Below are positions 33,654 through 56,345 of a stretch of DNA of 64,000 nt, piece after piece (within the stretch, counting starts at the first letter, position 1; each line of letters starts with the position of its first letter). The stretch lies in the IMG/VR virus record IMGVR_UViG_3300047499_000113, positions 62,001 to 126,000 of that record; one strand, 5' to 3'. The position numbers and the translations under genes are program-made. A model generated the notes under the pieces. It was not told the origin of the DNA. It saw only the letters and a list, made by a program, of their open reading frames with translations, and did not search any database.

Positions 33654-34661
33654 TCAGTCGTCCATCTGAGACAGCATCAGGAGACCAGTCGCGACGGCCG
33701 TCATCGGGTCGATCGCGCCACGCACCTCCGAGATCTGGATGGGGAACTTGGCGCGATGAAGCTCGAAGCGCTCCTTGAACTTGTCGAGGAAGCCGCCGGC
33801 GAGCGAGGTCCCGCCCGACACGATGATGGGGATGGGCTTCGGGACGAGAAGCTCGTTCTTGGCCTTCGCGAAGCGCTTGCTGAACTCGTCGATGGTGTAA
33901 TCGATGAGTGTCTGGACGAAGAGCGCGATGGCCTCTTCCTCGCGCGTCTTGGGCTTGGTGATGTCGATGCCGCCTTCCTTGACGGCGCACATCTTGGCCG
34001 CCGTCGAGTTGACAGCTTTGGCCGCACCACCATCGATCCAGTCACCACCCTTGCCGAGAGAAAACTCGAGGGCGCTCATGGCGTTGTACGCCAGACACAC
34101 GTTTGTCATGCCCGAGCCATACGAGATGCCGAGTCCGGAGAAGCTCTCCTTCGTGCAATCCGCATAGATGATGGCGAGCGCTTCGTTGACGGGCTCTGCC
34201 TGATACCCGAGTTCGCCCAGGATCTTGCCGAGGATTGCCCGGTGGTAGGTCACGTCCGACCCCACGACGTCGACCGCCGGCGCCGGGATGGAGTAGCAGC
34301 ACTTCTCCTTGGGCATGCGAGGCTCGCCCAAGATCTGCTTCATCATCAGACCGATGACCTGCTGCGCGTCGATTTCGCCCGAGGCGATCACGCCCTGGGA
34401 CATGGGACGACGAGCCTCCCTGTTGAACAGGTTGGCCGTCTCGAGGGCTTTGTCACCGATGACTAGGAGCTTGCCGTCGACCTCCACGTAGTCGGTGTTG
34501 GAGATCTTGAGCATCCGCTTGGTGTCGAGCGGAAGGTCCAAGAAGGCGTCGCGGACCCGGGAGTGCACGATCTTCTTGGCACTGCGCCGCGCGGCCACGA
34601 AATTCATCGTGCCGCAGTCGAGTCCTACCCCCGCGTCTTCAGGCTTCTTGGTGTCGGTCAT
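33654..34661 (-). CDS. Actin-family ATPase (volactin/MamK-like group)
   Basis: Phosphate-1 GLDCGTMN, connect-1 EPVNEALA, phosphate-2 GISYGSGMTNVC, adenosine VSGGTS, connect-2 DPMTAVATG; start taken as ATG 34661. Confidence 0.9.
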   Translation of the reverse strand: MTDTKKPEDAGVGLDCGTMNFVAARRSAKKIVHSRVRDAFLDLPLDTKRMLKISNTDYVEVDGKLLVIGDKALETANLFNREARRPMSQGVIASGEIDAQQVIGLMMKQILGEPRMPKEKCCYSIPAPAVDVVGSDVTYHRAILGKILGELGYQAEPVNEALAIIYADCTKESFSGLGISYGSGMTNVCLAYNAMSALEFSLGKGGDWIDGGAAKAVNSTAAKMCAVKEGGIDITKPKTREEEAIALFVQTLIDYTIDEFSKRFAKAKNELLVPKPIPIIVSGGTSLAGGFLDKFKERFELHRAKFPIQISEVRGAIDPMTAVATGLLMLSQMDD

Positions 34662-34694
34662 GGGTCTGCGTCTCCGTATCCAGGACAATACAGC

Positions 34695-38031: not shown

Positions 38032-38343
38032 CTATTCTTCCTGTTCGCCCTGCTCGTCTTCGCCGAAGTCACCCTGGTCGTTGATGGCTACCTCGAGCTT
38101 CAGAGGCTTGACAAGCACGCGGCCCGGTTCCAAGCGCAGTTCCCGGGATACCACCTTGATGGCCGCCTCGAGCGCGCTCATGACCTCGGACTCGAGCTTT
38201 TTGACCAGAACATCCTTGGCGACCTGTCCCTCGAACTCTGCGCTGAAGGCTATCTCCGTCCGGACGCTGTACTCGGTCGCCGGGTGCTCCAGGCTCTCGT
38301 GGGTAGAGGCCGCAACGCGAGCAGCGATGGACTCGAGTCTCAT
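38032..38343 (-). CDS. Hypothetical protein with N-terminal SIAARVAA motif
   Basis: Probable start ATG 38343 (MRLESIAARVAAST); the longer track ORF is an upstream extension through the divergent gene. Confidence 0.65.
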   Translation of the reverse strand: MRLESIAARVAASTHESLEHPATEYSVRTEIAFSAEFEGQVAKDVLVKKLESEVMSALEAAIKVVSRELRLEPGRVLVKPLKLEVAINDQGDFGEDEQGEQEE

Positions 38344-38390
38344 ATTCTGGGCACGCATGAAAATTCTGGAGGCTTGGTTGTAACCTGGGT

Positions 38391-38957
38391 GTGGGTCGGG
38401 CCCGGTTTCCTCATCCCTGCGTCTGCAAGGTCTGCGACAAGGAAGTTCCATACAAGGAACGCAAACGCTGTCACAAGTGCGGCGATTGGGTCCACAACTT
38501 TTGCGGCAACGTGGACAGCCGTCATCCCGAAAAGCGGACTCTTTGCTTCGGCTGCCTGCCTCCATGTTCGAACATGGAACTCATCGATGCGCAGATGCAG
38601 GATCTCGACACCAATTGGGAGCCCGAGGCGTACAAGTCCGGGGCTATCTTCCTTGCGTCGCTGCACTGCGGGCCAGACGAGCAGAAAATCGCCGAGCTGA
38701 CTGGCTACCTGCCGGACGAAGTCCGACTCCGAGGCGACAGACTTCGAGCGAACAAGCTCTGGTTCGACGACAAGGTTGCCATTCCAGGACCAGTCCCGGA
38801 AGGTGACGGTCGAGCCGCGAGCATCGCGCTTCTCATGGCCGTCCTGTGCGCGGACGGGATGATTCAGCGCTCAGATACCGAGGAAGCGGCGGGGAGTAAG
38901 GGCGCCGCGGCCGACGCTGGGACCAAACGAGCTGCGGATGCCGACACCGAAGCGTGA
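38391..38957 (+). CDS. PHD-finger-like (C4HC3) + HTH-like protein
   Basis: CKVC-x11-CHKC-GDWV-H-NF-C-x13-CFGC, then EQKIAELTGYLPDEVRLRGDRLRANKLW. GTG start with weak RBS; 3' end overlaps the adaptor gene by 87 nt. Confidence 0.62.
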   Translation: MGRARFPHPCVCKVCDKEVPYKERKRCHKCGDWVHNFCGNVDSRHPEKRTLCFGCLPPCSNMELIDAQMQDLDTNWEPEAYKSGAIFLASLHCGPDEQKIAELTGYLPDEVRLRGDRLRANKLWFDDKVAIPGPVPEGDGRAASIALLMAVLCADGMIQRSDTEEAAGSKGAAADAGTKRAADADTEA

Positions 38958-39770
38958 CTGACGCAAACCGCGAATGATCTTCACGGTCTCCTTCGCGGCT
39001 GTCACGAAGTCGGTGAAACGCTGCTGGGCGTCGTTGGCCATGCCCTGGTACTTGGCGCTCTTCTCCAAGTCGAGCGACACACCGCCGATGGTGTATCCGA
39101 ACTCGTCGAGGATCCAGTTCAAGGACACGGCGTTGACCGCGTGCACCATAGCGCCTGTGAAGAGCAGAGTGCGCCAGTCGCGGTGCTCCGAGATGAGCTG
39201 GTCGAGCGTCTGGTAGAACGTCTGCGGCGGGTACATGTTGATGGAGTCGTTGGACATCCGCAGGAACTCGAGCAGTTCCGCGTCCTCCCAAATGTAGCCG
39301 AACACACGCGTGAACTCGTTGACCGATTCTTCGCCCGCCGGCGGCACGAAGTGGTAGTTGCGCGCCGGGTTGTTGTCGCGGAGCATGATGCGCATGCCGC
39401 GAATGAGGTCGTACTCGATGGGCGTGATCCCAGGAAGGGTCACGACCTGCGTCGCGTTATCGACGATCGAGAACTCCTGGACCGTCTGGACTTGAGGCGA
39501 GTTGACGAACTGCCTGAAGTACCAGCGAATGCGATAGTTGCCGATATTGGCGTCGAGCGGGATGACGAAACAAGCGAAGTATTCACCCGTTGCCGGATTG
39601 CGCGGATGACGATTCGCTGGCGGGAGGATGACCTCGAGTCCCGTCGTGAAATCGTAGACGCTGTAGGTGATCTCGGCCGCGTTGGTGGGCGAGCCGTCCT
39701 TCGACTTCAGGAAGATGTTGAGGCCATTCGCGCGCCCCAACTCCTGACCCCGCCGGAATGTGGTCGCCAT
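38871..39770 (-). CDS. Head-tail adaptor/neck protein with N-terminal Ig-like domain
   Basis: GEYFACFVIP...GNYRIRWYF (Ig-like), then LIRGMRIMLRDNNP...WEDAELLEFL...GGVSLDLEKSAKY (adaptor-like helical domain). Confidence 0.65.
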   Translation of the reverse strand: MATTFRRGQELGRANGLNIFLKSKDGSPTNAAEITYSVYDFTTGLEVILPPANRHPRNPATGEYFACFVIPLDANIGNYRIRWYFRQFVNSPQVQTVQEFSIVDNATQVVTLPGITPIEYDLIRGMRIMLRDNNPARNYHFVPPAGEESVNEFTRVFGYIWEDAELLEFLRMSNDSINMYPPQTFYQTLDQLISEHRDWRTLLFTGAMVHAVNAVSLNWILDEFGYTIGGVSLDLEKSAKYQGMANDAQQRFTDFVTAAKETVKIIRGLRQSRFGVGIRSSFGPSVGRGALTPRRFLGI

Positions 39771-39779
39771 GAAGGCACC

Positions 39780-40448
39780 TTACTCTTTGACGTGCGGCGT
39801 ATGGCCTTCGTTGTATTGGTTCCAGCTGAGTGCCTCGGCCCGCTCCTTCGAGAAGCCGTGGTCCTTGACCATCTTCTCGACGACGCCACCCCAGCCCGGA
39901 GGAGACTTGGCCGTCTCCTGCTGCTGACCCTGGTGTTCGCCCTCGTTCAGATGGACCTCGGGAATGGGCTCGTCGCCCTCCGCGTCCTCGAGGGTCATCT
40001 TCCAGTCAGCTTGCTGCTGACCCTGCTGCTCTTGCTGCCCAGTGGTCTCCATCGCAGCGATGATGGACTGCAGGTCGGACAGTACGACCTCGAGCTGAGG
40101 TTTCGTCGAGTTGGCAAGACGCGCGGCGACGAGCCGGATGTCGTGTGCGATGTCGTTGGGCGTAACTGCGCCCTTCTTCATGTGCTTGAACTTCTCGACC
40201 TGCTTGAGGCGCTCCTCGGCCTTGCCGTGCGAGGGATAGCAACCACCACTCCAGTCCGGGTTTTTCTCGGACTTGACGCAGTAGCCCTTGCCCTTCTCGT
40301 GCTTGATGTAGCCAACCTGCTCCTGCTGGCCCTGCTGTTCCTGCTGCGAAACAACCGCGGGCGGAGCATCCGCGGGCAGACCTTCAGATTGCTGCTGAGC
40401 GCAGACGGAACGCGATGCTACCCGGGCGGCCAGAGAGAGCAGACTCAT
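39780..40448 (-). CDS. Modular Gln-rich hypothetical protein with N-terminal SLAARVAS motif
   Basis: Probable start ATG 40448 (MSLLSLAARVASRS); modules GYCVKSEK...GCYPSHGKAEERLKQVEKFKH and SPPGWGGVVEKM...AEALSWNQYN joined by QQEQQGQQ repeats. Confidence 0.7.
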   Translation of the reverse strand: MSLLSLAARVASRSVCAQQQSEGLPADAPPAVVSQQEQQGQQEQVGYIKHEKGKGYCVKSEKNPDWSGGCYPSHGKAEERLKQVEKFKHMKKGAVTPNDIAHDIRLVAARLANSTKPQLEVVLSDLQSIIAAMETTGQQEQQGQQQADWKMTLEDAEGDEPIPEVHLNEGEHQGQQQETAKSPPGWGGVVEKMVKDHGFSKERAEALSWNQYNEGHTPHVKE

Positions 40449-40649
40449 ATCTCTGGTCGACATAAAAGGTATAGTCGAGAGGCCATGCTCAGAGGACTGC
40501 GCAAGCTCGCCATTTCCTTCCGCTGGATGAGCGAGAACTCGGACCGGATACAAGTGCAGCCGCAGATTGTATGGACCAGGCGCTCTGCAGTCACAGAGAA
40601 GCCGAAAGCACGGCCCGTAAGTCCGAGGCCACATCGTGTAGCCCGGTCT

Positions 40650-41294
40650 ATGACGATGACCGCGCAGCTGCCCTGGAAGTTTCCGTTCAAGCCAGTGCGG
40701 GCGCCATGGTCAGTCTTCCAGACGTTGACACTCTCCAACTACTTCATGGAGAAGAAGTTCGACGGCTGGCGAGCCATCGTGCAGGTCGGCGCGAACAACA
40801 TCGTGACGCTCTGGACCCGCGAGAAGCGGCTGATCACGATGCCGGACAACTTGAACAAGCAGCTCGCATTGCTCCAGATGCCGGAAGGCACTCTTCTGGA
40901 CGGCGAGATTTGGAACATGTCCAAGCGCGGCGCCTGGAAGCACAATCGCTCGGCCGTGTGCGCCCTGACGCTTTGGGACGCCATCCGGGTCGACACGCGA
41001 GACTTCTCAGGCGAGCCCATCGAGAAGCGGCGGGAGGCCCTGGAGAAGCTGCTCGAGGGCAAGGACACGCCCGACATCAAGGCGACGGAGCTTCTGGCGG
41101 CCGACGAGACTATCGCGCGTCAGATCGACGCGGAAGCCCGGTCATTTCGCGAGGGCTCGCAGGCTCGATCCGGTTTCATTCACGGCGTGGTTTTGAAGCG
41201 GCGTGGGTCGCCGCGACGAGACAACGCCGTTCGGTGTGTCGAGCACGCCGATTGGATCAAGATTGTCTTCGACGGCATGCAGAGCGGCCTCTGA
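40650..41294 (+). CDS. ATP-dependent ligase-like nucleotidyltransferase domain, no OB-fold
   Basis: Motif I EKKFDGWR, III LLDGEI, IIIa LTLWDAI, RREALEKL, IV variant IHGVVLK, V WIKI. The start could be upstream at ATG 40485. Confidence 0.8.
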   Translation: MTMTAQLPWKFPFKPVRAPWSVFQTLTLSNYFMEKKFDGWRAIVQVGANNIVTLWTREKRLITMPDNLNKQLALLQMPEGTLLDGEIWNMSKRGAWKHNRSAVCALTLWDAIRVDTRDFSGEPIEKRREALEKLLEGKDTPDIKATELLAADETIARQIDAEARSFREGSQARSGFIHGVVLKRRGSPRRDNAVRCVEHADWIKIVFDGMQSGL

Positions 41295-42608
41295 TTCTGG
41301 CTGATACTTCCGGACGATCCCGAACAGCTTGACGCCGGCTGCGTCAAAATCGCGCTCGTCCCAAACGTTGCGGCCATCGAAGGCCACCAGGTCCCGGGAT
41401 AGGCGCTTGAGATGCTGCACGTCAGGATTGCGATACTGACGCCACTCGGTGCAAAGGACGATGGCGTCCGCACCAAGGACAGACTCGTACATTTCGCTCG
41501 CGATGCTCACGCGATTGCCGTATCTCTCGTGCACCCGCTGCAAAGCTTGCGGGTCATGCACGATGACGTCGGCTCCGGCCGCGAGCATATCGTCGATGAA
41601 ATCGACAGCAGGAGACTCGCGGATGTCGTCGGTCTCCGCTTTGAACGCGGCACCCCACACGCAGATCTTCTTGCCATGCAGATTGCCGTAGAACTTGGAC
41701 ACGAGCTGGCCGAGCAGGTGTCGCTGGACGTTGTTGGCGTTGTTCGCTGCGTTGACCACGAGAAGATCCTGCCCGACCATCTCCGCCATGTGACGCAGAG
41801 CCATCACATCTTTGGGAAGACAGGAGCCGCCGTACCCGGGCCCGGGGTACAGGTACTGGTGTCCGATACGGGGATCGGCGCCCATCCCGCGACGCACGAA
41901 GTCGATGTCCGCCCCAAGAGCGGTAGCGAGTCTGGCCAGCTCGTTTATGTACGAAATGCGCGTCGCAAGAAACGCATTCGAGGCGTACTTCACGAGTTCG
42001 GAGGACGCCGGATCCATGACGAGCGTCTTGCCCGAGGCCATCGGCCGATAGAGCCGCATGAGGGCGTCTCTTGCGCCGGCGCAGGTGGTTCCAATGACCA
42101 CTCGGTCGGGCCGCATGAAGTCTTCGACCGCCGTACCCTCGCGGAGGAACTCCGGATTGGAGGCCACGCAGCAGTGCTTGTCGAAGTACGACGAGATGAT
42201 CTTGCCGACTGCGTGCGTCGTCCCGACCGGCACTGTGCTCTTGACCACGACAACCTTGTGGGGCTGCTTGGTCTCGCGCAAGACTTCTCCGATCGTGCGC
42301 GCCGTGGCCATCACACTCGATAGGTCGGCCGACCCGTCCGAAGCCTGCGGCGTGCCGACAGTGATGAAGACGACGTCGGCCTGAACGATCGATTGATGAA
42401 CATCAGTCGTGAAGGACAGCCGACCCTCGCCCATGTTGCTGGCGAGCAGGTCGTCCAGGCCGGGCTCGTAGATCGGCGACTTGATGCGGTTGAGCTGGGA
42501 GATCTTGGTCGCGTCGGTGTCCGCGCAAACCACTTCGTTCCCGAACTGCGCGAATCCCGTGCCCGAAACCAAACCAACGTATCCCGCCCCGATCATCGCC
42601 AGCTTCAT
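41142..42608 (-). CDS. ugd: UDP-glucose 6-dehydrogenase
   Basis: IGAGYVGL, FITVGTP, KSTVPVGT, NPEFLREG, KYASNAFLA, GYGGSCLPKD, AFKAETDDIRESP, DGRN; C-terminal extension overlaps the convergent ligase gene. Confidence 0.96.
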   Translation of the reverse strand: MKLAMIGAGYVGLVSGTGFAQFGNEVVCADTDATKISQLNRIKSPIYEPGLDDLLASNMGEGRLSFTTDVHQSIVQADVVFITVGTPQASDGSADLSSVMATARTIGEVLRETKQPHKVVVVKSTVPVGTTHAVGKIISSYFDKHCCVASNPEFLREGTAVEDFMRPDRVVIGTTCAGARDALMRLYRPMASGKTLVMDPASSELVKYASNAFLATRISYINELARLATALGADIDFVRRGMGADPRIGHQYLYPGPGYGGSCLPKDVMALRHMAEMVGQDLLVVNAANNANNVQRHLLGQLVSKFYGNLHGKKICVWGAAFKAETDDIRESPAVDFIDDMLAAGADVIVHDPQALQRVHERYGNRVSIASEMYESVLGADAIVLCTEWRQYRNPDVQHLKRLSRDLVAFDGRNVWDERDFDAAGVKLFGIVRKYQPESEAALHAVEDNLDPIGVLDTPNGVVSSRRPTPLQNHAVNETGSSLRALAK

Positions 42609-42627
42609 CTGCCACCTGTCTGCAACG

Positions 42628-44184
42628 TTACTCGGCGACGGCCTCGGCCATTGGGGGGCTCCTTCTCAGGATAAAATGAGGAAGGTCGCTCTGGCCCATG
42701 GAGTGCTCGTAACGCATGGCCGCCTTGCCTGGATTGAACGGAATACCGAGCTTCTCGCGCACGGAGTTCTCGACCCAATTGCGCATCTTCACCAGCTCTT
42801 CACCGCTCAGGTGATCGGTGAAGACGTACGAGTGGTACCCGCCGTTGGGGTCGCCCTTGTAATATTCGGCCACTTTCGTGAAGTCCACGTCGTAGGCATG
42901 CAGCCTATCACCGGACTTCTTACATGTGTACGTCCAAACGTCCTCGAGCGTCGGGTGCTCGATGGCCTCGTCGTAATACGGGGTGCCGGGGTAGGTCGTG
43001 ATGACCGTGCAGTCGAAATCGTCTGGCTTGACCTGCAAGAGCCAATCATGTACCGCGGTGATCGTTTCCTCGGACTCTCCGGGATGACCCACCGACATCA
43101 GGGCCTTGACCTTGAGCCCATGGCGGCGAGCGATTTCGAGGACGCGCGTGTTGTCGTCGATAGTCGCTTTCTTGTTGATGTTCTGCAGGATGCGCGGAGA
43201 AGCCGCCTCGAATCCGCAGAGAAGCCAGCGGAAGCCAGCGCGGTACATGGCCGCAGCCTGTTCGTCCGTGAAAAGCTCCGACTTAACAAACCCGCGGAGT
43301 CGAAACTCGGCGCCTACTTCGGACTGCAAATCCGACAGTGCATTCATCAGCTCGACGATGCTCGGGTTGACGTTCAGTTCGTCATCGTAGAACATGAACC
43401 CGCGGAATCCGTAGTTGCGATGAAGCATCGCCACTTCGCGCACGATAGACTGCGTCGTGCGAGTGCGGATCATGCGCAGGGACTTGGAATTGCGGCCACC
43501 GCAGAACCCGCATCCGAATGGGCAGCCGAGCTGCGCGATGAGACTCGTGGCCTTCTCGCCATCGATGGTGTAATTGTATGAGCTGACGTCGACGAGATGC
43601 CGTGCCGGGTAGGGCGATGCATCGTAGGAAACGTCCGTCATGAACAGCCCGCTTCGAGGGTCGTCACCGTCGATGATGCGAGGAGCGTCGGGTTTGAGAG
43701 CAGCGAATACGGCAGCCTCACCATCACCCGAGACAAGAACGTCGAAATTCTGCAGCAAGCGGTCGAGTGCGGCGTGGGCACGGCCAGTGCGACCTGCCTT
43801 CTTCTCGAGCTTGACGGCCGAATGCACAAGTGTGACGTGCGGGCCGCCGATGATGATCTTCATGTCCGGTCGGACGGCTCGGATGCGCTCAGCCACCTTC
43901 ACCGCGGCCGGCAATTGCGGTGTGGTCGTAGTCAGGGCTGCGACCCGAGCCCGGGATTTCTTGGCGTACTCGTCGACGACATCGAGATAGTTCTCGATGC
44001 CCGACAAATCGAGGAGTTCGACCTCGTGACCCGCACGCTCAAGAACAGCGGCCACCTTGAGGATGCCGAGACTCATGAATACCCGCTCGTCGAGCAAAAA
44101 CACCGAGGGCGGTGTGATCATCAGGACCGGCTCCGGCGATCCCCTATCCTTGCCGACAAGCCTCCCGAGCGGAATGATATTCAC
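42628..44184 (-). CDS. Cobalamin-binding radical SAM enzyme (class B methyltransferase-like)
   Basis: N-terminal B12-binding domain (LGILKVAAVLERAGHEV...IIIGGPHVT), CPFGCGFC, FYDDELN, GFEAAS, GHPGESEET, TYPGTPYY. Confidence 0.92.
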   Translation of the reverse strand: MNIIPLGRLVGKDRGSPEPVLMITPPSVFLLDERVFMSLGILKVAAVLERAGHEVELLDLSGIENYLDVVDEYAKKSRARVAALTTTTPQLPAAVKVAERIRAVRPDMKIIIGGPHVTLVHSAVKLEKKAGRTGRAHAALDRLLQNFDVLVSGDGEAAVFAALKPDAPRIIDGDDPRSGLFMTDVSYDASPYPARHLVDVSSYNYTIDGEKATSLIAQLGCPFGCGFCGGRNSKSLRMIRTRTTQSIVREVAMLHRNYGFRGFMFYDDELNVNPSIVELMNALSDLQSEVGAEFRLRGFVKSELFTDEQAAAMYRAGFRWLLCGFEAASPRILQNINKKATIDDNTRVLEIARRHGLKVKALMSVGHPGESEETITAVHDWLLQVKPDDFDCTVITTYPGTPYYDEAIEHPTLEDVWTYTCKKSGDRLHAYDVDFTKVAEYYKGDPNGGYHSYVFTDHLSGEELVKMRNWVENSVREKLGIPFNPGKAAMRYEHSMGQSDLPHFILRRSPPMAEAVAE

Positions 44185-44221
44185 CCCGAAAAAGCCTGAT
44201 TAGAACTCTGTATAGTCCTCC

Positions 44222-44923
44222 ATGATCGGGACAGAGATTCGACGTGGGTCTTTTGCCGGTAAAGAGTTCAGCTTCGTGTACTGGAGCGAGCAGACAGGAC
44301 TCGACCCGGACAGGTCCAATGACACATGGTGGGTGTTCGAGGACGAAAAAGAGGTCCGCGAACGTCACTGGCATTTCCAGCCGGGTGACGTTGTCATAGA
44401 CGTGGGTTCGAACTGCGGAGGATATACCCTGACTGCAGCCGTCCAGGGCGCGGAGGTATGGGCTTTCGAGCCCTACAAGCTCTGCTCGAATTGCCTCGCA
44501 GCCAACGTCGCCATCAACCCCGATTTCAACATTCACATCATGCGGGTCGGAGCCTCAGACAAAGAAGAGGAGATCACGGGAATCGATGTATTCGGTCCTC
44601 GACTTGCCGGTTCGAATTCTTTCCCTGGGTATCACGAGCCGCTCAAGCTAGTCCCGCTCGACAGCGTCTTGGGGAATCTGGACAAGGTCGACATGATCAA
44701 GGTCGACATCGAGGGGCACGAGGCTAAGATGTTGCGAGGGGCGGCCGAGCTGATAAAGCGGTGCAAGCCCCGGATGCTCATCGAGGAGCACATCTTCCGC
44801 GACCCATCACTCAGCCAGCAATGTCAGGAGATCATCGAATCATGGAATCTCGGCTACAAAGTCGAGCGGGTTCCACGCGGAGCGGTGATCCACGCGTTCT
44901 GGACTACCGCGGGCCCCTTGTGA
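44222..44923 (+). CDS. FkbM-family methyltransferase
   Basis: VIDVGSNCGGYT, VWAFEP, MIKVDIEGHEAKMLRGA. Confidence 0.9.
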   Translation: MIGTEIRRGSFAGKEFSFVYWSEQTGLDPDRSNDTWWVFEDEKEVRERHWHFQPGDVVIDVGSNCGGYTLTAAVQGAEVWAFEPYKLCSNCLAANVAINPDFNIHIMRVGASDKEEEITGIDVFGPRLAGSNSFPGYHEPLKLVPLDSVLGNLDKVDMIKVDIEGHEAKMLRGAAELIKRCKPRMLIEEHIFRDPSLSQQCQEIIESWNLGYKVERVPRGAVIHAFWTTAGPL

Positions 44924-45062
44924 TCGGATTACCGCATTCCTCACAGCATCCTTCGAGACCGTCGTCGTCTTCGTCGTCTTGAGACACGATCTCGACCAGA
45001 ACCGGATTGCATCGATCCGCTGACGGTCCGTCGATCGGTCGCAGGCATACTGTCTTGTTCAT
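44904..45062 (-). CDS. Small Cys-rich acidic protein (52 aa, below the ORF-track cutoff)
   Basis: ATGA-coupled to the GT stop: MNKTVCLRPIDGPSADRCNPVLVEIVSQDDEDDDGLEGCCEECGNPITRGPR. Confidence 0.45.
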   Translation of the reverse strand: MNKTVCLRPIDGPSADRCNPVLVEIVSQDDEDDDGLEGCCEECGNPITRGPR

Positions 45063-46192
45063 TGGCTAGCCTTCTTGGCTTTGACGTCCTGAATGATGCG
45101 CTCGAGTTCGACGCAGAGAACTCGATAGTCGTACTTCTTGGCGCGTTCACGGCCAAGATCCCACCACTTCTTGTGCTCTTGCTCGTCCTTCAAGAGCTTG
45201 ATGACCAAGTCGGCCCACTCGTGACCGTGATGGCTCGCCGGCGCATTGACCATCGGGCATGCACCCTCATAGATTTCTGGAAGCGCATCCGCTCGAGAGA
45301 TGACCGGCACTGCGCCTGAAGCGCAGCCCTCGATGATGGCTACTCCATACCCTTCCGTGTATTGGAAGGGATCGCACGGATAGGCCAGAACCATTGCCTC
45401 GCTGTACTCGAGCGCGAGCTGGTCCCGGGAAATGGATCCGATGTGAATGACACCCGGCAAGTCGAGCCTGTCGCGCACGAACATTGCTCGACGACCGTGC
45501 TCACGCAGATTGGCCTGAGGCGCACTAATCAGCCCGGGGATGCTCTCGAACCAATGGGCCATCGAGTGATAAAACACTCGAAGCTCGGCATGGGGAACAG
45601 CCTCGCGAATGCGTGGCCACTGGTCAAGGACCAGGTGGAGTCCGCGATCGGGCGACGATGTGTAAATGCAACGACCCGGCACCTTCGGAGCCATATCGTA
45701 GACGGTGGGGTCGCACCCGTTGTACATGGTGTACCACGGGATGTGGGCCGGCGGGCCCATCGTCTTCAATCGCTCACCGAGCGACGTCGAAGCCGGGCCG
45801 AACGCATCCACCCAAGCATACTCGTGCCCTTTGACATACGAAAAGTCGTTGAACTGCATGTCACAGATTCGTACGACTTTCGGGCTGACAATACCGAGCG
45901 CCGCGGGCTCGTTCCAAGTCAACGCAGCATCCCAGGTCTCGTCGATGCATCCGCGCTCAGGATATGGGCGGACTTTGACCTGGCCCCACATCATCGTTTG
46001 GGGATTTTCCGCACAGAAGACAGTCACGTCATGGCCTCGAGCAGCCATGAATTTCGCGTACGACAGGAACGAGCCATCCGTGCCCGTCAGGCCGCGGGGG
46101 TCCTGATTGATACGCGTGAAGTCGAAGGGCCGAGGACCCTGAGGCGACGTTGTGCCTGCGCTGATGGGGCCGAAAAGGAACCCGAGTTTCAT
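45059..46192 (-). CDS. GT-B (GT4-like) glycosyltransferase
   Basis: MYNGCD, YTSSPDRGL, EX7E motif EGYGVAIIE, SGAVPV. Confidence 0.9.
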   Translation of the reverse strand: MKLGFLFGPISAGTTSPQGPRPFDFTRINQDPRGLTGTDGSFLSYAKFMAARGHDVTVFCAENPQTMMWGQVKVRPYPERGCIDETWDAALTWNEPAALGIVSPKVVRICDMQFNDFSYVKGHEYAWVDAFGPASTSLGERLKTMGPPAHIPWYTMYNGCDPTVYDMAPKVPGRCIYTSSPDRGLHLVLDQWPRIREAVPHAELRVFYHSMAHWFESIPGLISAPQANLREHGRRAMFVRDRLDLPGVIHIGSISRDQLALEYSEAMVLAYPCDPFQYTEGYGVAIIEGCASGAVPVISRADALPEIYEGACPMVNAPASHHGHEWADLVIKLLKDEQEHKKWWDLGRERAKKYDYRVLCVELERIIQDVKAKKASQ

Positions 46193-48459
46193 GTGAGCCC
46201 CATGAGCAAGCGGACCTGCTTCGAGATCTCTGCCCAGTTGTGGGTCTTGCCCATCTCTCGCCCCCTGGCCTGAGCCACTTTGTAGACTTCGTTATCAGTC
46301 AAGAACCTGAGCAGGTTGTCGAAGTAGTGGTCCTTATTCTTCGCGTACGGTGCCGGAGTCGTCGGCACGAAGTTCCCGTAGATCTCGCCCAGCGCATCCG
46401 AACCACAGATTACCGGGAGGCATCCGGACACGGCGCCTTCGAGAGTTGTGCAAGAGAACCCTTCGGTAAACCGCACCGGGTCGCATGTGTAAGCGAGGAT
46501 TCGTGATTCGGACAGAACCTTCACCATTTGGCAGCGAGACACGCTCTTGTGATGGAAGAGCCCACGGCCCTGGAGCTGGCTGACCGCCATGTTGATGTAT
46601 TTGTACCTGTTGGCCAGTTCCTTCTCACCCAGCTGTTCGTAGATCTGAACGGCGTTGTCCTGGATGTGATAATAGACGTGGCATTCCACGTCGGGGACAC
46701 GCTTCTTCAGGCGCGGGAAAAGTTCCAGGAGCCAGTGAAGACCACGATCAGGACTTGAGGCATACACCAGCTTGTGGTTATTCCTCGGGAACTCGTAGTA
46801 AACTGATGGGTCGCATCCATTGGGTAGAATCCGCCAGTCCTTGAACTGGCTGAACTGCGACAGATGCTTCTGGTGCGCGTGCGACAGGGCGGTCACGATG
46901 TCCGTATACTGCTCCCATCCATGGCAGTATCCGAAATCGTTGACTTGCTGATTGAAAATACGCAGCGGCCCCTTATTCATATGTTGGAAGCCACCGGGGT
47001 GAATGGTCGCGAAGGCCGCGTACCAATCCTGTTTCGCTTCCTGCTGCCAGCGGTCCCACCTGGCGAACTGAATGCCATGAGCCGAGAAGTTCTGGCTGAA
47101 GTTCGAGTACATGGTCACATCGTGACCCTGTCTCCCCATTTCAATGGCCTGCATCAAGTTCGTGATCTCGGAACCTGTCAGTCCCCGAGGGTCTGTGAAC
47201 AGGACTTCTGGATTGATTGGTCGAACCGCCGCCCACGGGTCGAGCAAGAAAGCGATCTTCTTGCGTGACGATGACGTGGGAGCTGGCTTTGGGTCCGGTG
47301 CATCGCTCGGCTGGTAGCCAGGGACATCATTCGAGGGCTGGGGCGGGGGCTCGGGCGGTGGCGTAGTCGTGACAATCGGGACGAATCCGGTGTTCTGGCA
47401 GATGATGTCGCTCAGGACCTTTCCGGCTTTTTCGTACGTATATTGCTTGGCCAGTTCTCGGCCGAGCGCCGAGTAATGCTTGGACACATCACTGTCTTGC
47501 AGGACTTTCACTACCGCATCGGTAAACGGAGCCAGGCTCTTCTCAGCCGGACCGGGGACCATGTAGACATGGTCCTTGTAGATGGATTCCAGTGCATCCT
47601 GCGGGGTCAGGACGACGGGAATACCGATCTTGCAGCATTCCATGATGCTGACGGAAAATGTCTCGCACGGGGAAACGACCGAGCAGGGAAAGGCGAATAC
47701 ACTGGCTGCCGACAGCTCCTTCAGAACCTCGGTGCGAGGAAGGTTGGCCATCAGGGTGACGCCACCAGCCTTCTGAGCAAGTTCCAGGTTCTGCTTGAGA
47801 GCGCGGACTCGCCTGCTGATCTCGGAGTTCTCGATGCCGCGACGGTCCACGTGTGCGTAGAGCTTATCGAGGTCGCTGATCACGTGGAGAGTGGCGTGCG
47901 GGACTCGAGCCTTGATTTCTGGCCACATCTGCGCAAGAAGATGCAGGCCGCGCCCTGCTGACGTGTGATAGACGACGCGCCCAGAGACTGGGTTCCAATC
48001 CGGGACAGCCTCTACCGCGTTCGGAAGGACACGCCAATCCGCCCATGGAGCCCAGAATGCCTTCAGAGTCTCCAATGCTGCCTGGCTCGGCGCGGTATTG
48101 ACATCCGTGTGTTCGAATGCAGCCAGACCCTCAATGAGGTAGCTGTGGTGAGATGCAATCCGGAGACAGCCCCACCTGCCGCGAAGAGGCCGGGCGTCAT
48201 ACTGCGCCCACATGACGTTCGGGTGCCCATGCTTGTCTAGTTGATCAAGCGGAAAGTATTGGACGTTGTTGATCGAAGCGGGTGTCCGAAAGAGCGAAAA
48301 CGCCCGAACCTGGTGCCCGTACTTCGGCAGCTCTTTGACCAAATTGAGGAACGCAGCGCGACACCCACCACCCACGCTGTCAGACAGCGGGTTCAGCACG
48401 TCCATCGTGTATCCGCTGGCAGCGTCGGGTGACAGAATTGCGTGAACGATGGAGCCCAT
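46189..48459 (-). CDS. Tandem double GT-B (GT4-like) glycosyltransferase
   Basis: TGATG-coupled ATG 48459; two domains with SAGRGL/ETFSVSIME and SSPDRGL/EGFSCTTLE, joined by a Pro-rich linker. Confidence 0.9.
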   Translation of the reverse strand: MGSIVHAILSPDAASGYTMDVLNPLSDSVGGGCRAAFLNLVKELPKYGHQVRAFSLFRTPASINNVQYFPLDQLDKHGHPNVMWAQYDARPLRGRWGCLRIASHHSYLIEGLAAFEHTDVNTAPSQAALETLKAFWAPWADWRVLPNAVEAVPDWNPVSGRVVYHTSAGRGLHLLAQMWPEIKARVPHATLHVISDLDKLYAHVDRRGIENSEISRRVRALKQNLELAQKAGGVTLMANLPRTEVLKELSAASVFAFPCSVVSPCETFSVSIMECCKIGIPVVLTPQDALESIYKDHVYMVPGPAEKSLAPFTDAVVKVLQDSDVSKHYSALGRELAKQYTYEKAGKVLSDIICQNTGFVPIVTTTPPPEPPPQPSNDVPGYQPSDAPDPKPAPTSSSRKKIAFLLDPWAAVRPINPEVLFTDPRGLTGSEITNLMQAIEMGRQGHDVTMYSNFSQNFSAHGIQFARWDRWQQEAKQDWYAAFATIHPGGFQHMNKGPLRIFNQQVNDFGYCHGWEQYTDIVTALSHAHQKHLSQFSQFKDWRILPNGCDPSVYYEFPRNNHKLVYASSPDRGLHWLLELFPRLKKRVPDVECHVYYHIQDNAVQIYEQLGEKELANRYKYINMAVSQLQGRGLFHHKSVSRCQMVKVLSESRILAYTCDPVRFTEGFSCTTLEGAVSGCLPVICGSDALGEIYGNFVPTTPAPYAKNKDHYFDNLLRFLTDNEVYKVAQARGREMGKTHNWAEISKQVRLLMGLT

Positions 48460-49427
48460 CAGATTCCCCTCTTGAGATACCAGGCAATCGTCTTGGCGAT
48501 GCCCTGATCGTACGGCACTTTCGGTTCCCAGCCCAAGAATTTCTTGGCGAGCGCGATGTCCGGGCAACGCTGCTTCGGATCATCCGTGGGCAATGGCTTC
48601 ATGACGATGTCGCCCTCTCCGCCGAAAGCGGAGATGACATCCATGGCCACACTCTTGATGGTACGCTCGTCGGGGTTGCCGATGTTGACCACCGGGATGC
48701 GCTGATGGAGTGTGTCCACATCGACGTTCTTGATGGCTCGGAAGTTGACCTCCATGAGCTTCACGAGTGCATCGACGGTATCCGAGACGTAGCAGAAGCT
48801 CCTGGTCTGGCTTCCGTCGCCGTAGACCGTCAGCGGCTCTTTCTGCATGGCCTGCAGGATGAAGTTCGGAATGAGCCGGCCGTCACGGAAAGCCATCCGT
48901 GGACCGTAGGTGTTGAAGAGTCGCGCGATGCGAACGTCGGTGCCGTACTGGTTGGCCCAGGCGACCGCGAGACTCTCGCCGATGCGCTTGCCCTCGTCAT
49001 AGCAGGCACGCGGCCCGAGCGGATTGACGTGACCCCAGTAGCTCTCCTTCTGCGGATGCACCTCGGGGTCGCCGTAGACTTCGGAAGTCGACGTGATGAG
49101 GAGACGTGCCCGGGTGTTGCGCGCGCACTCGAGCGCGTTGCGCGTGCCCATCATCGCAGTCTCGATGGTCCGCACCGGGTTGCGTTGGTAGTGCACCGGG
49201 CTCGCAGGGCAGGCCAGATGGTAAATCTGGTCACACTCGATGTGCCACGGGTCGCAGACGTCGTGCCGGTAGAACTCGAAGTCCCGATGGTCGAACAGGT
49301 GAGCGATGTTCTCCCGGTGAGAGGTGAACATATTGTCGATGCAGACGACCTCGTGTTTCTGCGCGAGCAGAAATTCGCAGAGGTGACTTCCGATGAAACC
49401 CGCGCCTCCTGTGACAATTATGCGCAT
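48459..49427 (-). CDS. uxs: UDP-glucuronate decarboxylase (UDP-xylose synthase)
   Basis: TGGAGFIGSHL, YHLACPASPVHYQRNP, TSTSEVYGDP, YDEGKR, RLFNTYGPRM, GSQTRSFCYVSD, DDPKQRCPDI. Confidence 0.93.
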   Translation of the reverse strand: MRIIVTGGAGFIGSHLCEFLLAQKHEVVCIDNMFTSHRENIAHLFDHRDFEFYRHDVCDPWHIECDQIYHLACPASPVHYQRNPVRTIETAMMGTRNALECARNTRARLLITSTSEVYGDPEVHPQKESYWGHVNPLGPRACYDEGKRIGESLAVAWANQYGTDVRIARLFNTYGPRMAFRDGRLIPNFILQAMQKEPLTVYGDGSQTRSFCYVSDTVDALVKLMEVNFRAIKNVDVDTLHQRIPVVNIGNPDERTIKSVAMDVISAFGGEGDIVMKPLPTDDPKQRCPDIALAKKFLGWEPKVPYDQGIAKTIAWYLKRGI

Positions 49428-49912
49428 ATGAACTTCTCCAGATACCTAATAGCGGCTTTGAGAAGCTGGATGTTATCCAGAAAGCGCGCAAGTCCATTAT
49501 TGCATCTATCGCAGAGGAGACCTCGAATGATCTGAGTCAGATGATCATGATCCACGCTTAGACGCTTGAATTTCGTGCACTTTCGTTCGCAGATTGCACA
49601 TACACCATTCTGAGCTGCGAGCATCTGCTCATATTCTTCAACAGTGAGATTTCGACGCTGAAGGCTCCGAACTAACGGATAGTTAGGATGCTTCTCCTTC
49701 CAACGGAGATCTGCTTGTTTTTTATCCTCTGGGTCTCGAGCTGCTCTCCTAGCCTTCACTCTCTCAGGATGTCGTTTCTGATAATTCTCGACATTCACAC
49801 GTTGTTTGTCGAGATGGAACCCGCACTTCCAGGGAGTGAGACCTTTGGCTTTGCGATCGCGACAATCTTCGCATGGAGCATTTGTTGGTCTTGTAATTTC
49901 GAAAACGCTCAT
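49418..49912 (-). CDS. Endonuclease VII-family homing endonuclease
   Basis: ATGA-coupled ATG 49912; QNGVCAICE...LSVDHDH...IRGLLCDRCNNGL; low GC. Confidence 0.9.
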   Translation of the reverse strand: MSVFEITRPTNAPCEDCRDRKAKGLTPWKCGFHLDKQRVNVENYQKRHPERVKARRAARDPEDKKQADLRWKEKHPNYPLVRSLQRRNLTVEEYEQMLAAQNGVCAICERKCTKFKRLSVDHDHLTQIIRGLLCDRCNNGLARFLDNIQLLKAAIRYLEKFICA

Positions 49913-52347: not shown

Positions 52348-52410
52348 GCGGTCTTGGTCTCTGTATGCGTGTGGACCGGCGAACCTGCCGGTCAATCACA
52401 CGTTACCGAG

Positions 52411-55920: not shown

Positions 55921-56345
55921 TTTGACTTCTCCAGATACTCGGCGGCCATCCGCAACTGAATGGAACTGTCTTTCATCAGCTCAAGAGCCCTATTGCAATC
56001 TGTGCATAGAAGACCACGGATCACGTTTGTCTTGTGATCGCGGTCCACGGAAAGACGGATGACTTTGCCGTTTATCGTGCGCACTTCCTTCTCGCGACAT
56101 ATGGCACAGACTCCATTCTGTTCAACGAGAATTTGATCATAGTCTTCAGGAGGGATGCCGTAATCGTTCTTGAGGTTTCGTCGACGGACGCTCTCAGAGT
56201 GGAGAGGATCTAACCCATCGCGTTCGCGCCGAGTCGCAACACTTCTTTTTTTGCTGGCGGCATACGCTTCTGGATTCAGTTCACGGCTTTTCTTACTCCG
56301 TTCTATAGATGCTGCCTTCCTTTTCTGGGGGTCTTTGTACGGCAT
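55908..56345 (-). CDS. Endonuclease VII-family protein with His-to-Arg change in the DHDH motif
   Basis: TAATG-coupled; QNGVCAICR...LSVDRDH...IRGLLCTDCNRAL; low GC. Confidence 0.85.
   Translation of the reverse strand: MPYKDPQKRKAASIERSKKSRELNPEAYAASKKRSVATRRERDGLDPLHSESVRRRNLKNDYGIPPEDYDQILVEQNGVCAICREKEVRTINGKVIRLSVDRDHKTNVIRGLLCTDCNRALELMKDSSIQLRMAAEYLEKSKCPR

What the first reader, a model, noticed from the sequence alone, without database searches (positions are those of the whole stretch)
38391..38957. PHD-finger-like C4HC3 domain fused to an HTH-like region
Seen: CKVC-x11-CHKC-GDWV-H-NF-C-x13-CFGC has the C4HC3 spacing and the hallmark CxxCxxW(F/V)HxxC of PHD fingers, followed by IAELTGYLPDEVRLRGDRLRANKLW (winged-HTH-like). 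It is an isolated plus-strand gene among minus-strand neck genes. Established: PHD fingers are mainly eukaryotic peptide/methyl-lysine readers and are rarely reported in prokaryotes or phages. Inference: a regulator that reads a protein N-terminus or modification (the genome encodes several methyltransferases) and couples it to DNA binding.
Basis: partly seen in the sequence, partly recalled or inferred. Interest (0 to 1): 0.74.

Follow-up and report, generated by a model that had tools for sequence, protein, structure and literature searches.

The report
Phage PHD-like finger, winged-helix protein
A real, conserved gene of a very large phage from moss metagenomes encodes a small protein that joins a two-zinc finger of the PHD/FYVE type (best known from eukaryotic chromatin readers) to a winged-helix domain. 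It belongs to an uncatalogued phage family, gene callers usually cut the finger off, and its function, probably regulatory, is untested.

Summary
ORF 38391-38957 (+) carries an exact C4HC3 pattern with CxxCxxWxHxxC. The pattern occurs once in the window's six frames and never in 50 shuffles.

The ORF is a real gene. Codon-position variability among relatives is 14/15/39 in the finger and 29/18/72 in the second domain. The last 28 codons are constrained only by the antisense 299-aa gene.

About 60 metagenomic relatives exist. Those with an N-terminus keep the ligands plus Tyr21, Arg24 and Trp33. Gene callers often start at an internal Met and lose the finger, including in this genome.

The family profile matches solved PHD fingers best (MLL1 PHD3, E 2e-5 to 9e-5). 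AlphaFold models match FYVE and PHD fingers (TM 0.55-0.60, Z 5-6). Residues 62-158 match winged-helix regulators (Z 5-6.6).

The Pfam PHD score is below threshold. Only two of the four MLL1 methyl-lysine cage positions are kept. No SET-type methyltransferase was found, and the host is probably bacterial.

So: a PHD/FYVE-superfamily finger fused to a winged helix, most likely a small phage regulator or adaptor. The "methyl-mark reader" idea is unsupported. New variant of a known kind, moderate interest.

The parts
38391..38957 (+). Whole ORF, 188 aa, GTG start, TGA stop. The functional part is about residues 1-160.
   Evidence: Homologues. Purifying selection in this frame.
38368..38372 (+). 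GGAGG, the only Shine-Dalgarno-like motif upstream. It lies 18 nt before the GTG, and 12 nt before the CTG that aligns with the ATG start of relative L004.
   Evidence: Other genes of the window have GGAG-like motifs 6-9 nt upstream.
38357..38370 (.). ATGAAAATTCTGGA, a 14-nt block in the 32-nt divergent gap. It spans the start codon (CAT on the + strand) of the minus-strand 108-aa gene. It is invariant in four close relatives and unique in the window.
38418..38567 (+). Binuclear zinc finger, residues 10-59. The C4HC3 core runs from C12 to C55 (38424-38555). By analogy with PHD fingers, Zn1 would be held by C12, C15, H35 and C38, and Zn2 by C27, C30, C52 and C55. The conserved surface residues are Y21, R24 and W33.
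38574..38870 (+). Winged helix-turn-helix domain, residues 62-160. Helices are at 62-72, 78-93, 97-104 and 108-120 (the putative recognition helix, with R114, R117 and R119). The wing is W124-V129, followed by helix 140-155 carrying the LCAxG...R motif. The public gene call for this genome starts here, at Met62.
   Evidence: Model. Fold matches. Conservation. The truncated 127-aa call is P0004.
38871..38954 (+). Low-complexity tail, residues 161-188, encoded opposite the 3' end of the 299-aa gene. It is not under selection in its own frame.
   Evidence: Codon-position variability is 14/0/1 and dS is near 0. pLDDT is about 60. The tail is absent from distant relatives.
38871..39770 (-). Convergent 299-aa gene of unknown function. 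It overlaps the finger gene by 87 nt, and this overlap is conserved in relatives.
38032..38358 (-). Divergent 108-aa gene of unknown function. Its start codon lies 32 nt from the start of the finger gene.

Best explanation
The ORF is a genuine gene of a very large tailed phage: a 240-kb record, estimated 56% complete, from moss metagenomes.

Its product has about 160 functional residues in two domains. The first is a basic, two-zinc, cross-braced finger of the FYVE/PHD superfamily with the PHD ligand order C4HC3. The second is an acidic winged helix-turn-helix domain followed by one more conserved helix. The protein belongs to an uncatalogued, phage-only family.

Most likely it is a small regulator or adaptor made outside the late structural programme. 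In this view the winged helix, with recognition helix 108-120 and wing 124-129, places it on DNA. The finger, through the conserved Y21/R24/W33 face and its basic surface, either holds a protein partner in the peptide-binding manner of PHD, FYVE and Rab-effector fingers, or adds contacts to the nucleic-acid backbone.

In this lineage the gene lies antisense inside a minus-strand gene block (late/structural status inferred) and converges on the next gene with an 87-nt overlap. Its transcription and that of the late operon should therefore interfere with each other.

Shown: gene reality, family, ligand pattern, predicted folds and synteny. Inferred: zinc binding, cross-brace assignment, DNA binding, partner binding and timing of expression.
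For: Gene reality:
- Variable sites at codon positions 1/2/3 are 14/15/39 in the finger and 29/18/72 in the winged helix. Nei-Gojobori dN/dS is about 0.06-0.24 wherever dS could be estimated.

Family:
- There are 60 representatives at E<=1e-3 among 1.8 billion cluster representatives. All come from metagenomes.
- The family was not found in the phage GenBank collection, in the patterned scan (two short motifs, tblastn-confirmed) of genome contigs (one genome per 185,579 species) or in 401 genomes of one phylum.
- It has no PHROG or NCBIfam model.

Finger:
- Ligands are invariant and Y21, R24 and W33 are near-invariant.
- The family profile matches MLL1 PHD3 (E 2.4e-5 and 9e-5), KMT2D, KMT2C, EBS, BPTF and PHF2.
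- The finger-only model has pLDDT 83.8. Its best matches are FYVE, rabphilin, EEA1, MLL3 PHD6 and MLL1 PHD3, with TM 0.53-0.60 and Z 5-6.
- The nearest ESM Atlas clusters by sequence features are PHD proteins.

Winged helix:
- Residues 74-158 match IscR, ROK, IclR, MarR and NsrR DNA-binding domains at Z 5-6.6.
- R114, R117, L118, R119 and W124 are conserved.

Fusion:
- Two relatives called as C-terminal-only proteins have the complete finger in frame upstream.

Context:
- The synteny and the 87-nt overlap are kept down to 45% identity.
- Distant members lie co-directionally in runs of small ORFs next to DNA ligase, HNH, PLD, RtcB and PAPS-reductase genes.
Against: - No experiment or expression data exist: no RNA run was listed.
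- The start codon context is weak.
- The winged-helix domain is strongly acidic (median net charge -8). Its profile has no significant sequence match to any solved HTH protein and only sporadic sub-threshold Pfam HTH hits, so DNA binding rests on fold alone.
- Z scores of 5-7 are in the range the tool's own notes call common.
- In relative L002 (88% identical) the start codon is lost (GTG to GCG) and a -1/-2 pair of indels replaces Cys38 and the loop. The finger may therefore be dispensable there, or that assembly carries errors.
- No promoter-like site was found.
Confidence: 0.55

Rival explanations
1. It is a true PHD-type reader. The finger would recognise a methylated lysine or a free N-terminus of a host or phage protein and couple that mark to DNA through the winged helix.
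For: - The best sequence matches are the H3K4me3-reading PHD fingers.
- The family's near-invariant Y21 and W33 align with Y1581 and W1594 of the MLL1 PHD3 cage (alignments; cage residues from PMC8022399).
- W at position -2 from the His ligand is typical of methyl-lysine-reading PHD fingers (my own knowledge, not tested here).
Against: - Only 2 of the 4 cage positions are kept. The M1585 position is a near-invariant Arg and the Y1576 position is unconserved (D16 here).
- No SET or other searched methyltransferase family is present in the 240-kb record. The nearby FkbM and radical-SAM genes belong to a glycan island.
- The nearest cellular homologues of the phage's UDP-glucose dehydrogenase are all bacterial, so the host probably has no histone tails.
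- The Pfam PHD score is below threshold.
Confidence: 0.1
2. It does not bind DNA. The winged helix would be a protein-protein module, and the protein a host-takeover factor, an assembly factor or a virion-associated protein of the structural gene block in which it lies.
For: - The winged-helix domain is acidic across the whole family.
- The gene sits in a block downstream of the tail-sheath gene.
- The top structural match of residues 58-157 is a chain of the PhiKZ capsid model (8y6v_D, Z 7.0).
Against: - The gene is on the opposite strand to the structural genes.
- Distant relatives lie among small non-structural ORFs.
- Z 7.0 is within the range the tool calls common, and the PhiKZ paper gave no functional clue.
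- Conserved arginines line the putative recognition helix.
Confidence: 0.17
3. The Cys-rich domain is a sensor rather than a docking module. It would respond to zinc or redox state, or hold an iron-sulfur cluster, and switch the winged helix on or off, as the Cys ligands do in Rrf2 regulators.
For: - The winged helix resembles the Rrf2 regulators IscR and NsrR (Z 6.6 and 5.1).
- Close relatives carry 9 Cys and 1 His in about 50 residues, two Cys more than the eight ligands need (C10 and C59).
Against: - The ligand order, spacing and predicted fold are those of structural two-zinc fingers.
- The two extra Cys are not conserved in distant members.
Confidence: 0.08
4. The N-terminal finger is not translated, so the real product would be the 127-aa winged-helix protein from Met62 as annotated. 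Alternatively the ORF is an antisense artefact of a GC-rich genome.
For: - Gene callers start at Met62 in this genome and in L003.
- The start is GTG with GGAGG 18 nt upstream.
- L002 lacks a start codon before the finger.
- The antisense frame is also open across 38391-38870.
Against: - Third-position variability and low dN/dS hold in the finger codons themselves.
- All ligands are conserved at 25-30% identity.
- L004 has an ATG start, and L013 has an in-frame ATG, before the finger.
- No SD-like motif precedes Met62.
Confidence: 0.05

Closest known systems
PHD fingers (Pfam PF00628), especially MLL1/KMT2A PHD3, KMT2C/D PHD6, BPTF and PHF2
   Same: It has the C4HC3 ligand order and the same spacings (x2, x11, x2, x4, x2, x13, x2), plus the CxxCxxWxHxxC motif. 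The family profile's best matches among solved structures are PHD fingers (E 2e-5 to 1e-3). The Tyr and Trp align with two cage residues of MLL1 PHD3. The predicted fold superposes at TM about 0.53-0.58.
   Different: It is below Pfam's gathering score. It has half a cage, with an Arg in place of M1585. It comes from phages whose host is probably bacterial, and it is fused to a winged helix rather than to chromatin domains. Cys38 is displaced in a few members.
FYVE and FYVE-like Rab-effector fingers (RUFY, EEA1, Hrs, rabphilin-3A, Slp4, melanophilin, RIM)
   Same: These are the best structural matches of the predicted finger (Foldseek E 7.8e-3, TM 0.59-0.60; VIA Z 5-6). Basic residues sit just before the third Cys.
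   Different: The fifth ligand is His, not Cys. The defining WxxD, R(R/K)HHCR and RVC motifs are absent. No phosphoinositide target is expected in a bacterial host.
Winged-helix DNA-binding domains of Rrf2/IscR, MarR, IclR and ROK regulators
   Same: The predicted three-helix bundle, beta wing and following helix superpose over 55-75 residues (Z 5-6.6). The '...RLRxxGxW.DGKV' pattern is typical of the recognition helix plus wing.
   Different: There is no significant sequence similarity. The domain is strongly acidic. Dimerisation was not supported or refuted, and DNA binding is untested.
Zinc finger plus winged-helix architectures: archaeal TFE / eukaryotic TFIIE-alpha (winged helix + zinc ribbon), PHF1/MTF2 (PHD + winged helix), and AlphaFold DB entries named 'B box-type' or 'MarR family'
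   Same: They share the two-module logic of a small zinc module next to a winged helix. TFE-alpha appears among the fold matches (Z 4.7). AlphaFold DB clusters with a zinc finger followed by a MarR-like domain align over residues 9-167.
   Different: The domain order and finger type differ: TFE has a single-zinc ribbon after the winged helix. Whole-chain TM scores are only 0.2-0.28. No homology is shown.

Membership tests
PHD finger (PF00628) | Cys4-His-Cys3 ligand order with canonical spacing | tested here: met
   The pattern is C12-x2-C15-x11-C27-x2-C30-x4-H35-x2-C38-x13-C52-x2-C55. The ligands are conserved in 22-24 relatives. Cys38 is shifted in 3 members.
PHD finger (PF00628) | Score at or above Pfam's gathering threshold | tested here: not met
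   15.6 bits (E 0.017) against a cut-off of 24, although the match spans the full profile 1-47. Only 5 of 24 members match at E<0.1.
PHD finger (PF00628) | Profile-level sequence similarity to solved PHD fingers, ranked above other treble-clef families | tested here: met
   The family profile's top matches are MLL1 PHD3 (E 2.4e-5 and 9e-5), KMT2D, KMT2C, EBS, BPTF, PHF2 and TAF3. FYVE, RING and C1 domains rank lower.
PHD finger (PF00628) | Cross-braced binuclear treble-clef fold | tested here: met
   The AlphaFold finger model (pLDDT 83.8) aligns over 45-60 residues with solved FYVE and PHD fingers (TM 0.53-0.60; Z up to 6.0). The ligand-to-zinc assignment is by analogy, because model coordinates could not be inspected.
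PHD finger, methyl-lysine-reading subclass | Complete aromatic cage (MLL1 PHD3: Y1576, Y1581, M1585, W1594) | tested here: not met
   In the HMM alignments, Y21 aligns with Y1581 and W33 with W1594. R24 takes the place of M1585, and the Y1576 position is unconserved (D16). Cage residues are from PMC8022399.
PHD finger | Binds two Zn ions and a peptide ligand | not testable with these tools
   This needs metal analysis and binding assays.
FYVE domain (PF01363) | WxxD, R(R/K)HHCR and RVC signature motifs, and eight Cys ligands | tested here: not met
   The sequence has RKRCHKCG and RTLCFGC, with His at the fifth ligand position. Pfam FYVE matches 1 of 24 members, at E 0.031.
FYVE/PHD structural superfamily | Overall fold similarity to members | tested here: met
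   Most of the top 50 Foldseek matches and the top 19 VIA matches are FYVE or PHD fingers, with LIM, C1 and others filling the rest.
RING finger | C3HC4 (or C3H2C3) ligand order | tested here: not met
   His is the fifth ligand, not the fourth. RING entries appear only at E>=0.018 in the profile search.
Winged helix-turn-helix DNA-binding domain | Three-helix bundle plus beta-hairpin wing | tested here: met
   The model has pLDDT 92-98 over residues 61-130 and 95-97 over 141-160 (89 at 131-140). It matches IscR, ROK, IclR, MarR and Z-alpha domains (Z 4.7-6.6).
Winged helix-turn-helix DNA-binding domain | Significant sequence match to a curated HTH family | tested here: not met
   Pfam gives only sporadic sub-threshold hits (HTH_Cmi2_C in 2 of 43 members, HTH_Crp_2, HTH_24). 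The profile search against solved structures gave nothing real.
Winged helix-turn-helix DNA-binding domain | Binds DNA | not testable with these tools
   The domain is acidic but has conserved Arg residues on the putative recognition helix. EMSA or ChIP is needed.

The most novel reading that the evidence does not exclude
Phages of bacteria carry a genuine homologue of the eukaryotic PHD finger. It would use the conserved Tyr/Arg/Trp pocket to read a specific peptide feature of a host or phage protein, such as a modified lysine or an N-terminus, and tether it to DNA through the winged helix. This family would then be a prokaryotic-virus relative, or even a source, of a reader module thought to be a eukaryotic invention.
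Probability: 0.1. Interest if true: 0.85.

Novelty: new variant of a known kind. Interest (0 to 1): 0.52.

Why it matters
PHD fingers are treated as a hallmark of eukaryotic chromatin biology. I found no report of a PHD-like finger family in bacteriophages in four full-text searches, and no model for this family in Pfam, PHROGs or NCBIfam.

A conserved phage family would matter in two ways. Its finger is closest in sequence to H3K4me3-reading PHD fingers and closest in shape to FYVE-type fingers, and it is wired to a winged helix. That gives a tractable prokaryotic system for asking what such fingers bind outside chromatin, and it bears on where the FYVE/PHD fold came from.

There is also a practical point. 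The finger is systematically lost from annotations because gene callers prefer an internal ATG. Similar N-terminal zinc modules may be under-counted in GC-rich phage genomes.

Tried and rejected
- Homodimer prediction for residues 1-165, two copies: 'no answer' (score 0.08, mark 0.42). This is not evidence either way.
- Expression: no RNA run was listed. The DNA runs are moss metagenomes. Laying four of them gave only identical contig fragments, so no population variation was available.
- tblastn against 50,697 deposited phage genomes: no match. A blastn search of the neighbourhood gave only a 109-bp hit.
- Close-relative scan of 185,579 species genomes: none. A profile search of 401 genomes of one phylum gave three marginal hits, and the two inspected were unrelated zinc ribbons.
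- PHROGs and NCBIfam: nothing.
- BFVD viral structures: no analogue of the two-domain architecture; only small zinc-finger proteins matched.
- ESM Atlas shape search: TM <= 0.40.
- The Pfam 'Siva' hit (E 0.0057) and the C1, DZR and zinc-ribbon hits were judged generic Cys-rich similarity.
- The PhiKZ capsid chain match (8y6v_D, Z 7.0) was followed into the paper without result.
- The designed repeat proteins at the top of the winged-helix profile search were judged spurious.
- Promoter and terminator scan: no sigma-70-like site, and terminator-like hits were at the chance level.
- Repeats in the region: nothing that suggests an operator.
- The Burroughs et al. 2011 paper on prokaryotic binuclear treble clefs could not be read.

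Full report
**1. The observation**

The ORF at 38391-38957 on the plus strand is present as described: GTG start, 188 codons, TGA stop.

- Its product contains C12-x2-C15-x11-C27-x2-C30-x4-H35-x2-C38-x13-C52-x2-C55, including CHKCGDWVHNFC.
- IAELTGYLPDEVRLRGDRLRANKLW lies at residues 100-124.
- A loose C4HC3 regular expression finds this one place in the six-frame translation of the 64-kb window and nothing in 50 shuffles.
- The gene is flanked by minus-strand genes on both sides.
- The window is bases 62001-126000 of a 240-kb IMG/VR virus record estimated to be 56% complete. Identical sequence occurs in several moss metagenome runs.

**2. Is it a gene, and is the finger part of it?**

Public gene calls for this genome and for one relative start at Met62 and give a 127-aa product without the cysteines. 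The cysteine-rich stretch is nevertheless in frame and conserved:

- in L003, which has a GTG at the same position as here;
- in L004, which has an ATG two codons upstream;
- in L006, at 45% identity.

Among the window, L003 and L004, the numbers of variable sites at codon positions 1/2/3 are as follows:

| Region | Positions 1/2/3 |
|---|---|
| Finger, residues 9-60 | 14/15/39 |
| Residues 62-160 | 29/18/72 |
| Last 28 codons | 14/0/1 |

Nei-Gojobori dN/dS is about 0.06-0.24 wherever dS can be estimated, and dS is otherwise saturated. The finger is therefore translated and under purifying selection.

The last 28 codons lie opposite the 3' end of the convergent 299-aa gene, and dS there is near zero. 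That tail is shaped by the other strand. It is absent from distant relatives and is predicted to be disordered.

The base composition by codon position fits the plus frame (GC 0.65, 0.44 and 0.71 at positions 1, 2 and 3).

The start context is poor. GGAGG lies 18 nt before the GTG, whereas other genes of the window have such motifs 6-9 nt upstream. No such motif precedes Met62.

One relative, L002 (88% identical), has GCG in place of the start codon. It also has a -1 and a -2 deletion that put 16 codons, including Cys38, out of frame before the frame is restored. In that lineage the finger is either decaying or mis-assembled.

**3. The family**

An exhaustive phmmer search of 1.8 billion cluster representatives found 60 proteins at E<=1e-3.

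- All traced members come from metagenomes, several on contigs of 180-430 kb.
- None was found in deposited phage genomes, in the patterned scan of one genome per species or in 401 genomes of one bacterial phylum.
- There is no PHROG, NCBIfam or above-threshold Pfam model.
- In 24 members with an N-terminus, C27, C30, H35, C52, C55, W124 and G156 are invariant. C15, Y21, R24, W33 and A154 are at least 90% conserved.
- Two members called as C-terminal-only proteins have the whole finger in frame upstream of the called start. The two-domain fusion is therefore the rule, and the truncation is an annotation artefact.

**4. The finger**

*Sequence.* Pfam PHD matches over its whole length but below threshold (15.6 bits against 24). 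Profiles of the family do better. The best matches among 177,635 solved-chain sequences are MLL1 PHD3 (E 2.4e-5 for the whole-protein profile, 9e-5 for the finger-only profile). These are followed by KMT2D, KMT2C, EBS, SHL, BPTF, PHF2, TAF3 and Pygopus. FYVE, C1 and RING domains rank lower.

*Structure.* AlphaFold models are confident: pLDDT 87.6 for the whole protein and 83.8 for the finger alone.

- By Foldseek the finger model is nearest to a RUFY FYVE domain (E 7.8e-3, TM 0.59), rabphilin-3A, EEA1, MLL3 PHD6 and MLL1 PHD3.
- By an exhaustive aligner it is nearest to the Slp4, melanophilin and RIM fingers and to FYVE domains (Z 5-6), with PHD fingers at Z 3-4.
- The nearest ESM Atlas clusters by sequence features are PHD proteins, at a score that is only a lead.

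*Assignment.* The domain belongs to the FYVE/PHD binuclear treble-clef group. Its ligand order and sequence are PHD-like, and its predicted shape is slightly closer to FYVE-type fingers. The FYVE signature motifs and the RING ligand order are not met.

However, the assignment of ligands to the two zinc sites is by analogy, since I could not inspect coordinates.

**5. Is it a methyl-lysine reader?**

In the HMM alignments to MLL1 PHD3, the cage residues listed in PMC8022399 map as follows:

| MLL1 PHD3 cage residue | This family |
|---|---|
| Y1576 | unconserved (D16 here) |
| Y1581 | Y21 (near-invariant) |
| M1585 | R24 (near-invariant Arg) |
| W1594 | W33 (near-invariant) |

Two walls of the cage are therefore kept, and the pocket carries a positive charge. 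That fits a conserved functional surface but not an obvious methyl-ammonium cage.

Other points bear on this.

- The 240-kb record has no SET, Methyltransf_25, N6/N4 or C5 methyltransferase match.
- The methyltransferase-like genes near the finding are an FkbM-type enzyme and a B12 radical-SAM enzyme. They sit in an island with UDP-glucose dehydrogenase and glycosyltransferases.
- The nearest cellular homologues of that dehydrogenase are all bacterial, at 43-50% identity. A Sigma70_r4_2 match (a model that also hits archaeal genomes) and a weak sigma-70 region-2 match exist elsewhere in the genome. The host is therefore probably a bacterium, without histone tails.

**6. The second domain**

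Residues 62-158 are modelled at pLDDT mostly 92-98 (89 at 131-140) as a helix, a three-helix bundle, a beta wing and a further helix.

- They superpose on the DNA-binding domains of IscR, ROK, IclR, MarR and NsrR at Z 5-6.6.
- Sequence methods give only sporadic sub-threshold HTH hits.
- Conserved positions include R114, R117, L118 and R119 on the putative recognition helix, W124 and the DGKV wing, and an LCAxG...R motif in the last helix.
- The domain is acidic throughout the family (median pI 4.65, net charge -8). The finger is basic (median pI 8.9, net charge +5).

DNA binding is therefore plausible but not secure.

**7. Context**

The neighbours have no informative family match.

- A 1939-aa sheath-like protein lies 8 kb upstream, so a structural block is plausible, but 'neck' is unverified.
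- The arrangement is conserved in L002, L003, L004 and L006, down to 45% identity. It consists of a 443-aa gene, two small genes, the finger gene on the opposite strand, an 87-nt convergent overlap with a 299-aa gene, and then a ligase-like gene.
- A variant of this arrangement occurs in L012.
- The divergent gap to the 108-aa gene is only 32 nt. It contains a 14-nt block that is invariant in the four close relatives.
- More distant members lie co-directionally within runs of small ORFs, beside DNA ligase, HNH, PLD, RtcB and PAPS-reductase genes. That is the look of early or middle phage regions.

**8. Most likely mechanism**

A low-abundance regulator or adaptor. The winged helix would bind DNA. 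The basic finger would either dock a protein partner on its Tyr/Arg/Trp face or add backbone contacts.

In this lineage the gene's antisense position inside the minus-strand gene block would make its expression and late transcription mutually exclusive.

The fold assignments, the family and the synteny are shown. Zinc binding, DNA binding, the partner and the timing are inferred. I give the whole statement 0.55.

Rivals:

| Rival | Confidence |
|---|---|
| Non-DNA-binding protein module or virion-associated factor | 0.17 |
| True methyl or N-terminus reader | 0.10 |
| Metal or redox sensor | 0.08 |
| Untranslated finger or spurious ORF | 0.05 |

**9. Novelty and verdict**

Both domains belong to known fold groups, and zinc module plus winged-helix pairings exist elsewhere (TFE/TFIIE-alpha, PHF1/MTF2; AlphaFold DB clusters).

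What is new is a conserved, phage-restricted family whose finger is PHD-like in sequence. It is not catalogued in any family database, it is usually truncated by gene callers, and it was not found in four full-text literature searches.

I rate it a new variant of a known kind, with interest about 0.5. Its functional inference is unsupported.

Noticed in passing
window 33654-34688 (-): A 344-aa protein matches Pfam Volactin, an actin-like family named after a Haloferax protein, at E 2.6e-73 over the full profile. The gene is kept in relatives L002 and L006. A phage-encoded actin homologue next to the structural block deserves its own look.
   Followed up: partly
window 24830-30649 (-): A giant 1939-aa protein has a phage tail-sheath C-terminal domain at its end and an E1_FCCH-like segment in the middle. 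It looks like an unusually large sheath-like protein.
   Followed up: no
window 56345-61048 (-) and 61048-63999 (-): Two adjacent very large collagen-triple-helix repeat proteins, of 1567 and at least 983 aa (Pfam Collagen E 4e-204 and 3e-130).
   Followed up: no
window 41142-52395: A glycan-synthesis island inside the phage. It contains UDP-glucose dehydrogenase, a B12-binding radical-SAM enzyme, an FkbM-type methyltransferase (plus strand) and three glycosyltransferase genes.
   Followed up: partly
L002 10195-12447 (relative of window 42628-44184): In the 88%-identical relative, the B12 radical-SAM gene product is annotated with an intein and a LAGLIDADG endonuclease (at least 918 aa). The window's copy is 518 aa with no intein hit.
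   Followed up: no
L002 5881-6060 (aligned to window 38391-38570): The relative has GCG instead of the GTG start. It also has a -1 and a -2 deletion, both in T runs, that shift 16 codons of the finger, including Cys38, and then restore the frame. A new ATG in the shifted stretch is what the gene caller used.
   Followed up: partly
window 38574; L003 258; L012 3001; L013 789: Gene callers start this family at an internal ATG and drop the zinc finger, which begins at GTG or at a weak-context start. At least four of the inspected loci are affected.
   Followed up: yes
window 38357-38370: The 14-nt block ATGAAAATTCTGGA in the 32-nt divergent gap is invariant in four relatives whose flanks vary. 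It is unique in the window. It may be a shared control element or simply the two start regions.
   Followed up: partly
window 40571-41294 (+); L002 8207-8860; L006 8149-8814: A second plus-strand gene 1.6 kb downstream is annotated in relatives with weak DNA-ligase and mRNA-capping nucleotidyltransferase hits. The tested frame, 40571-41294, gave no Pfam hit here. That frame differs from the ligase-like reading, which lies in the overlapping 39141-41294 ORF.
   Followed up: partly
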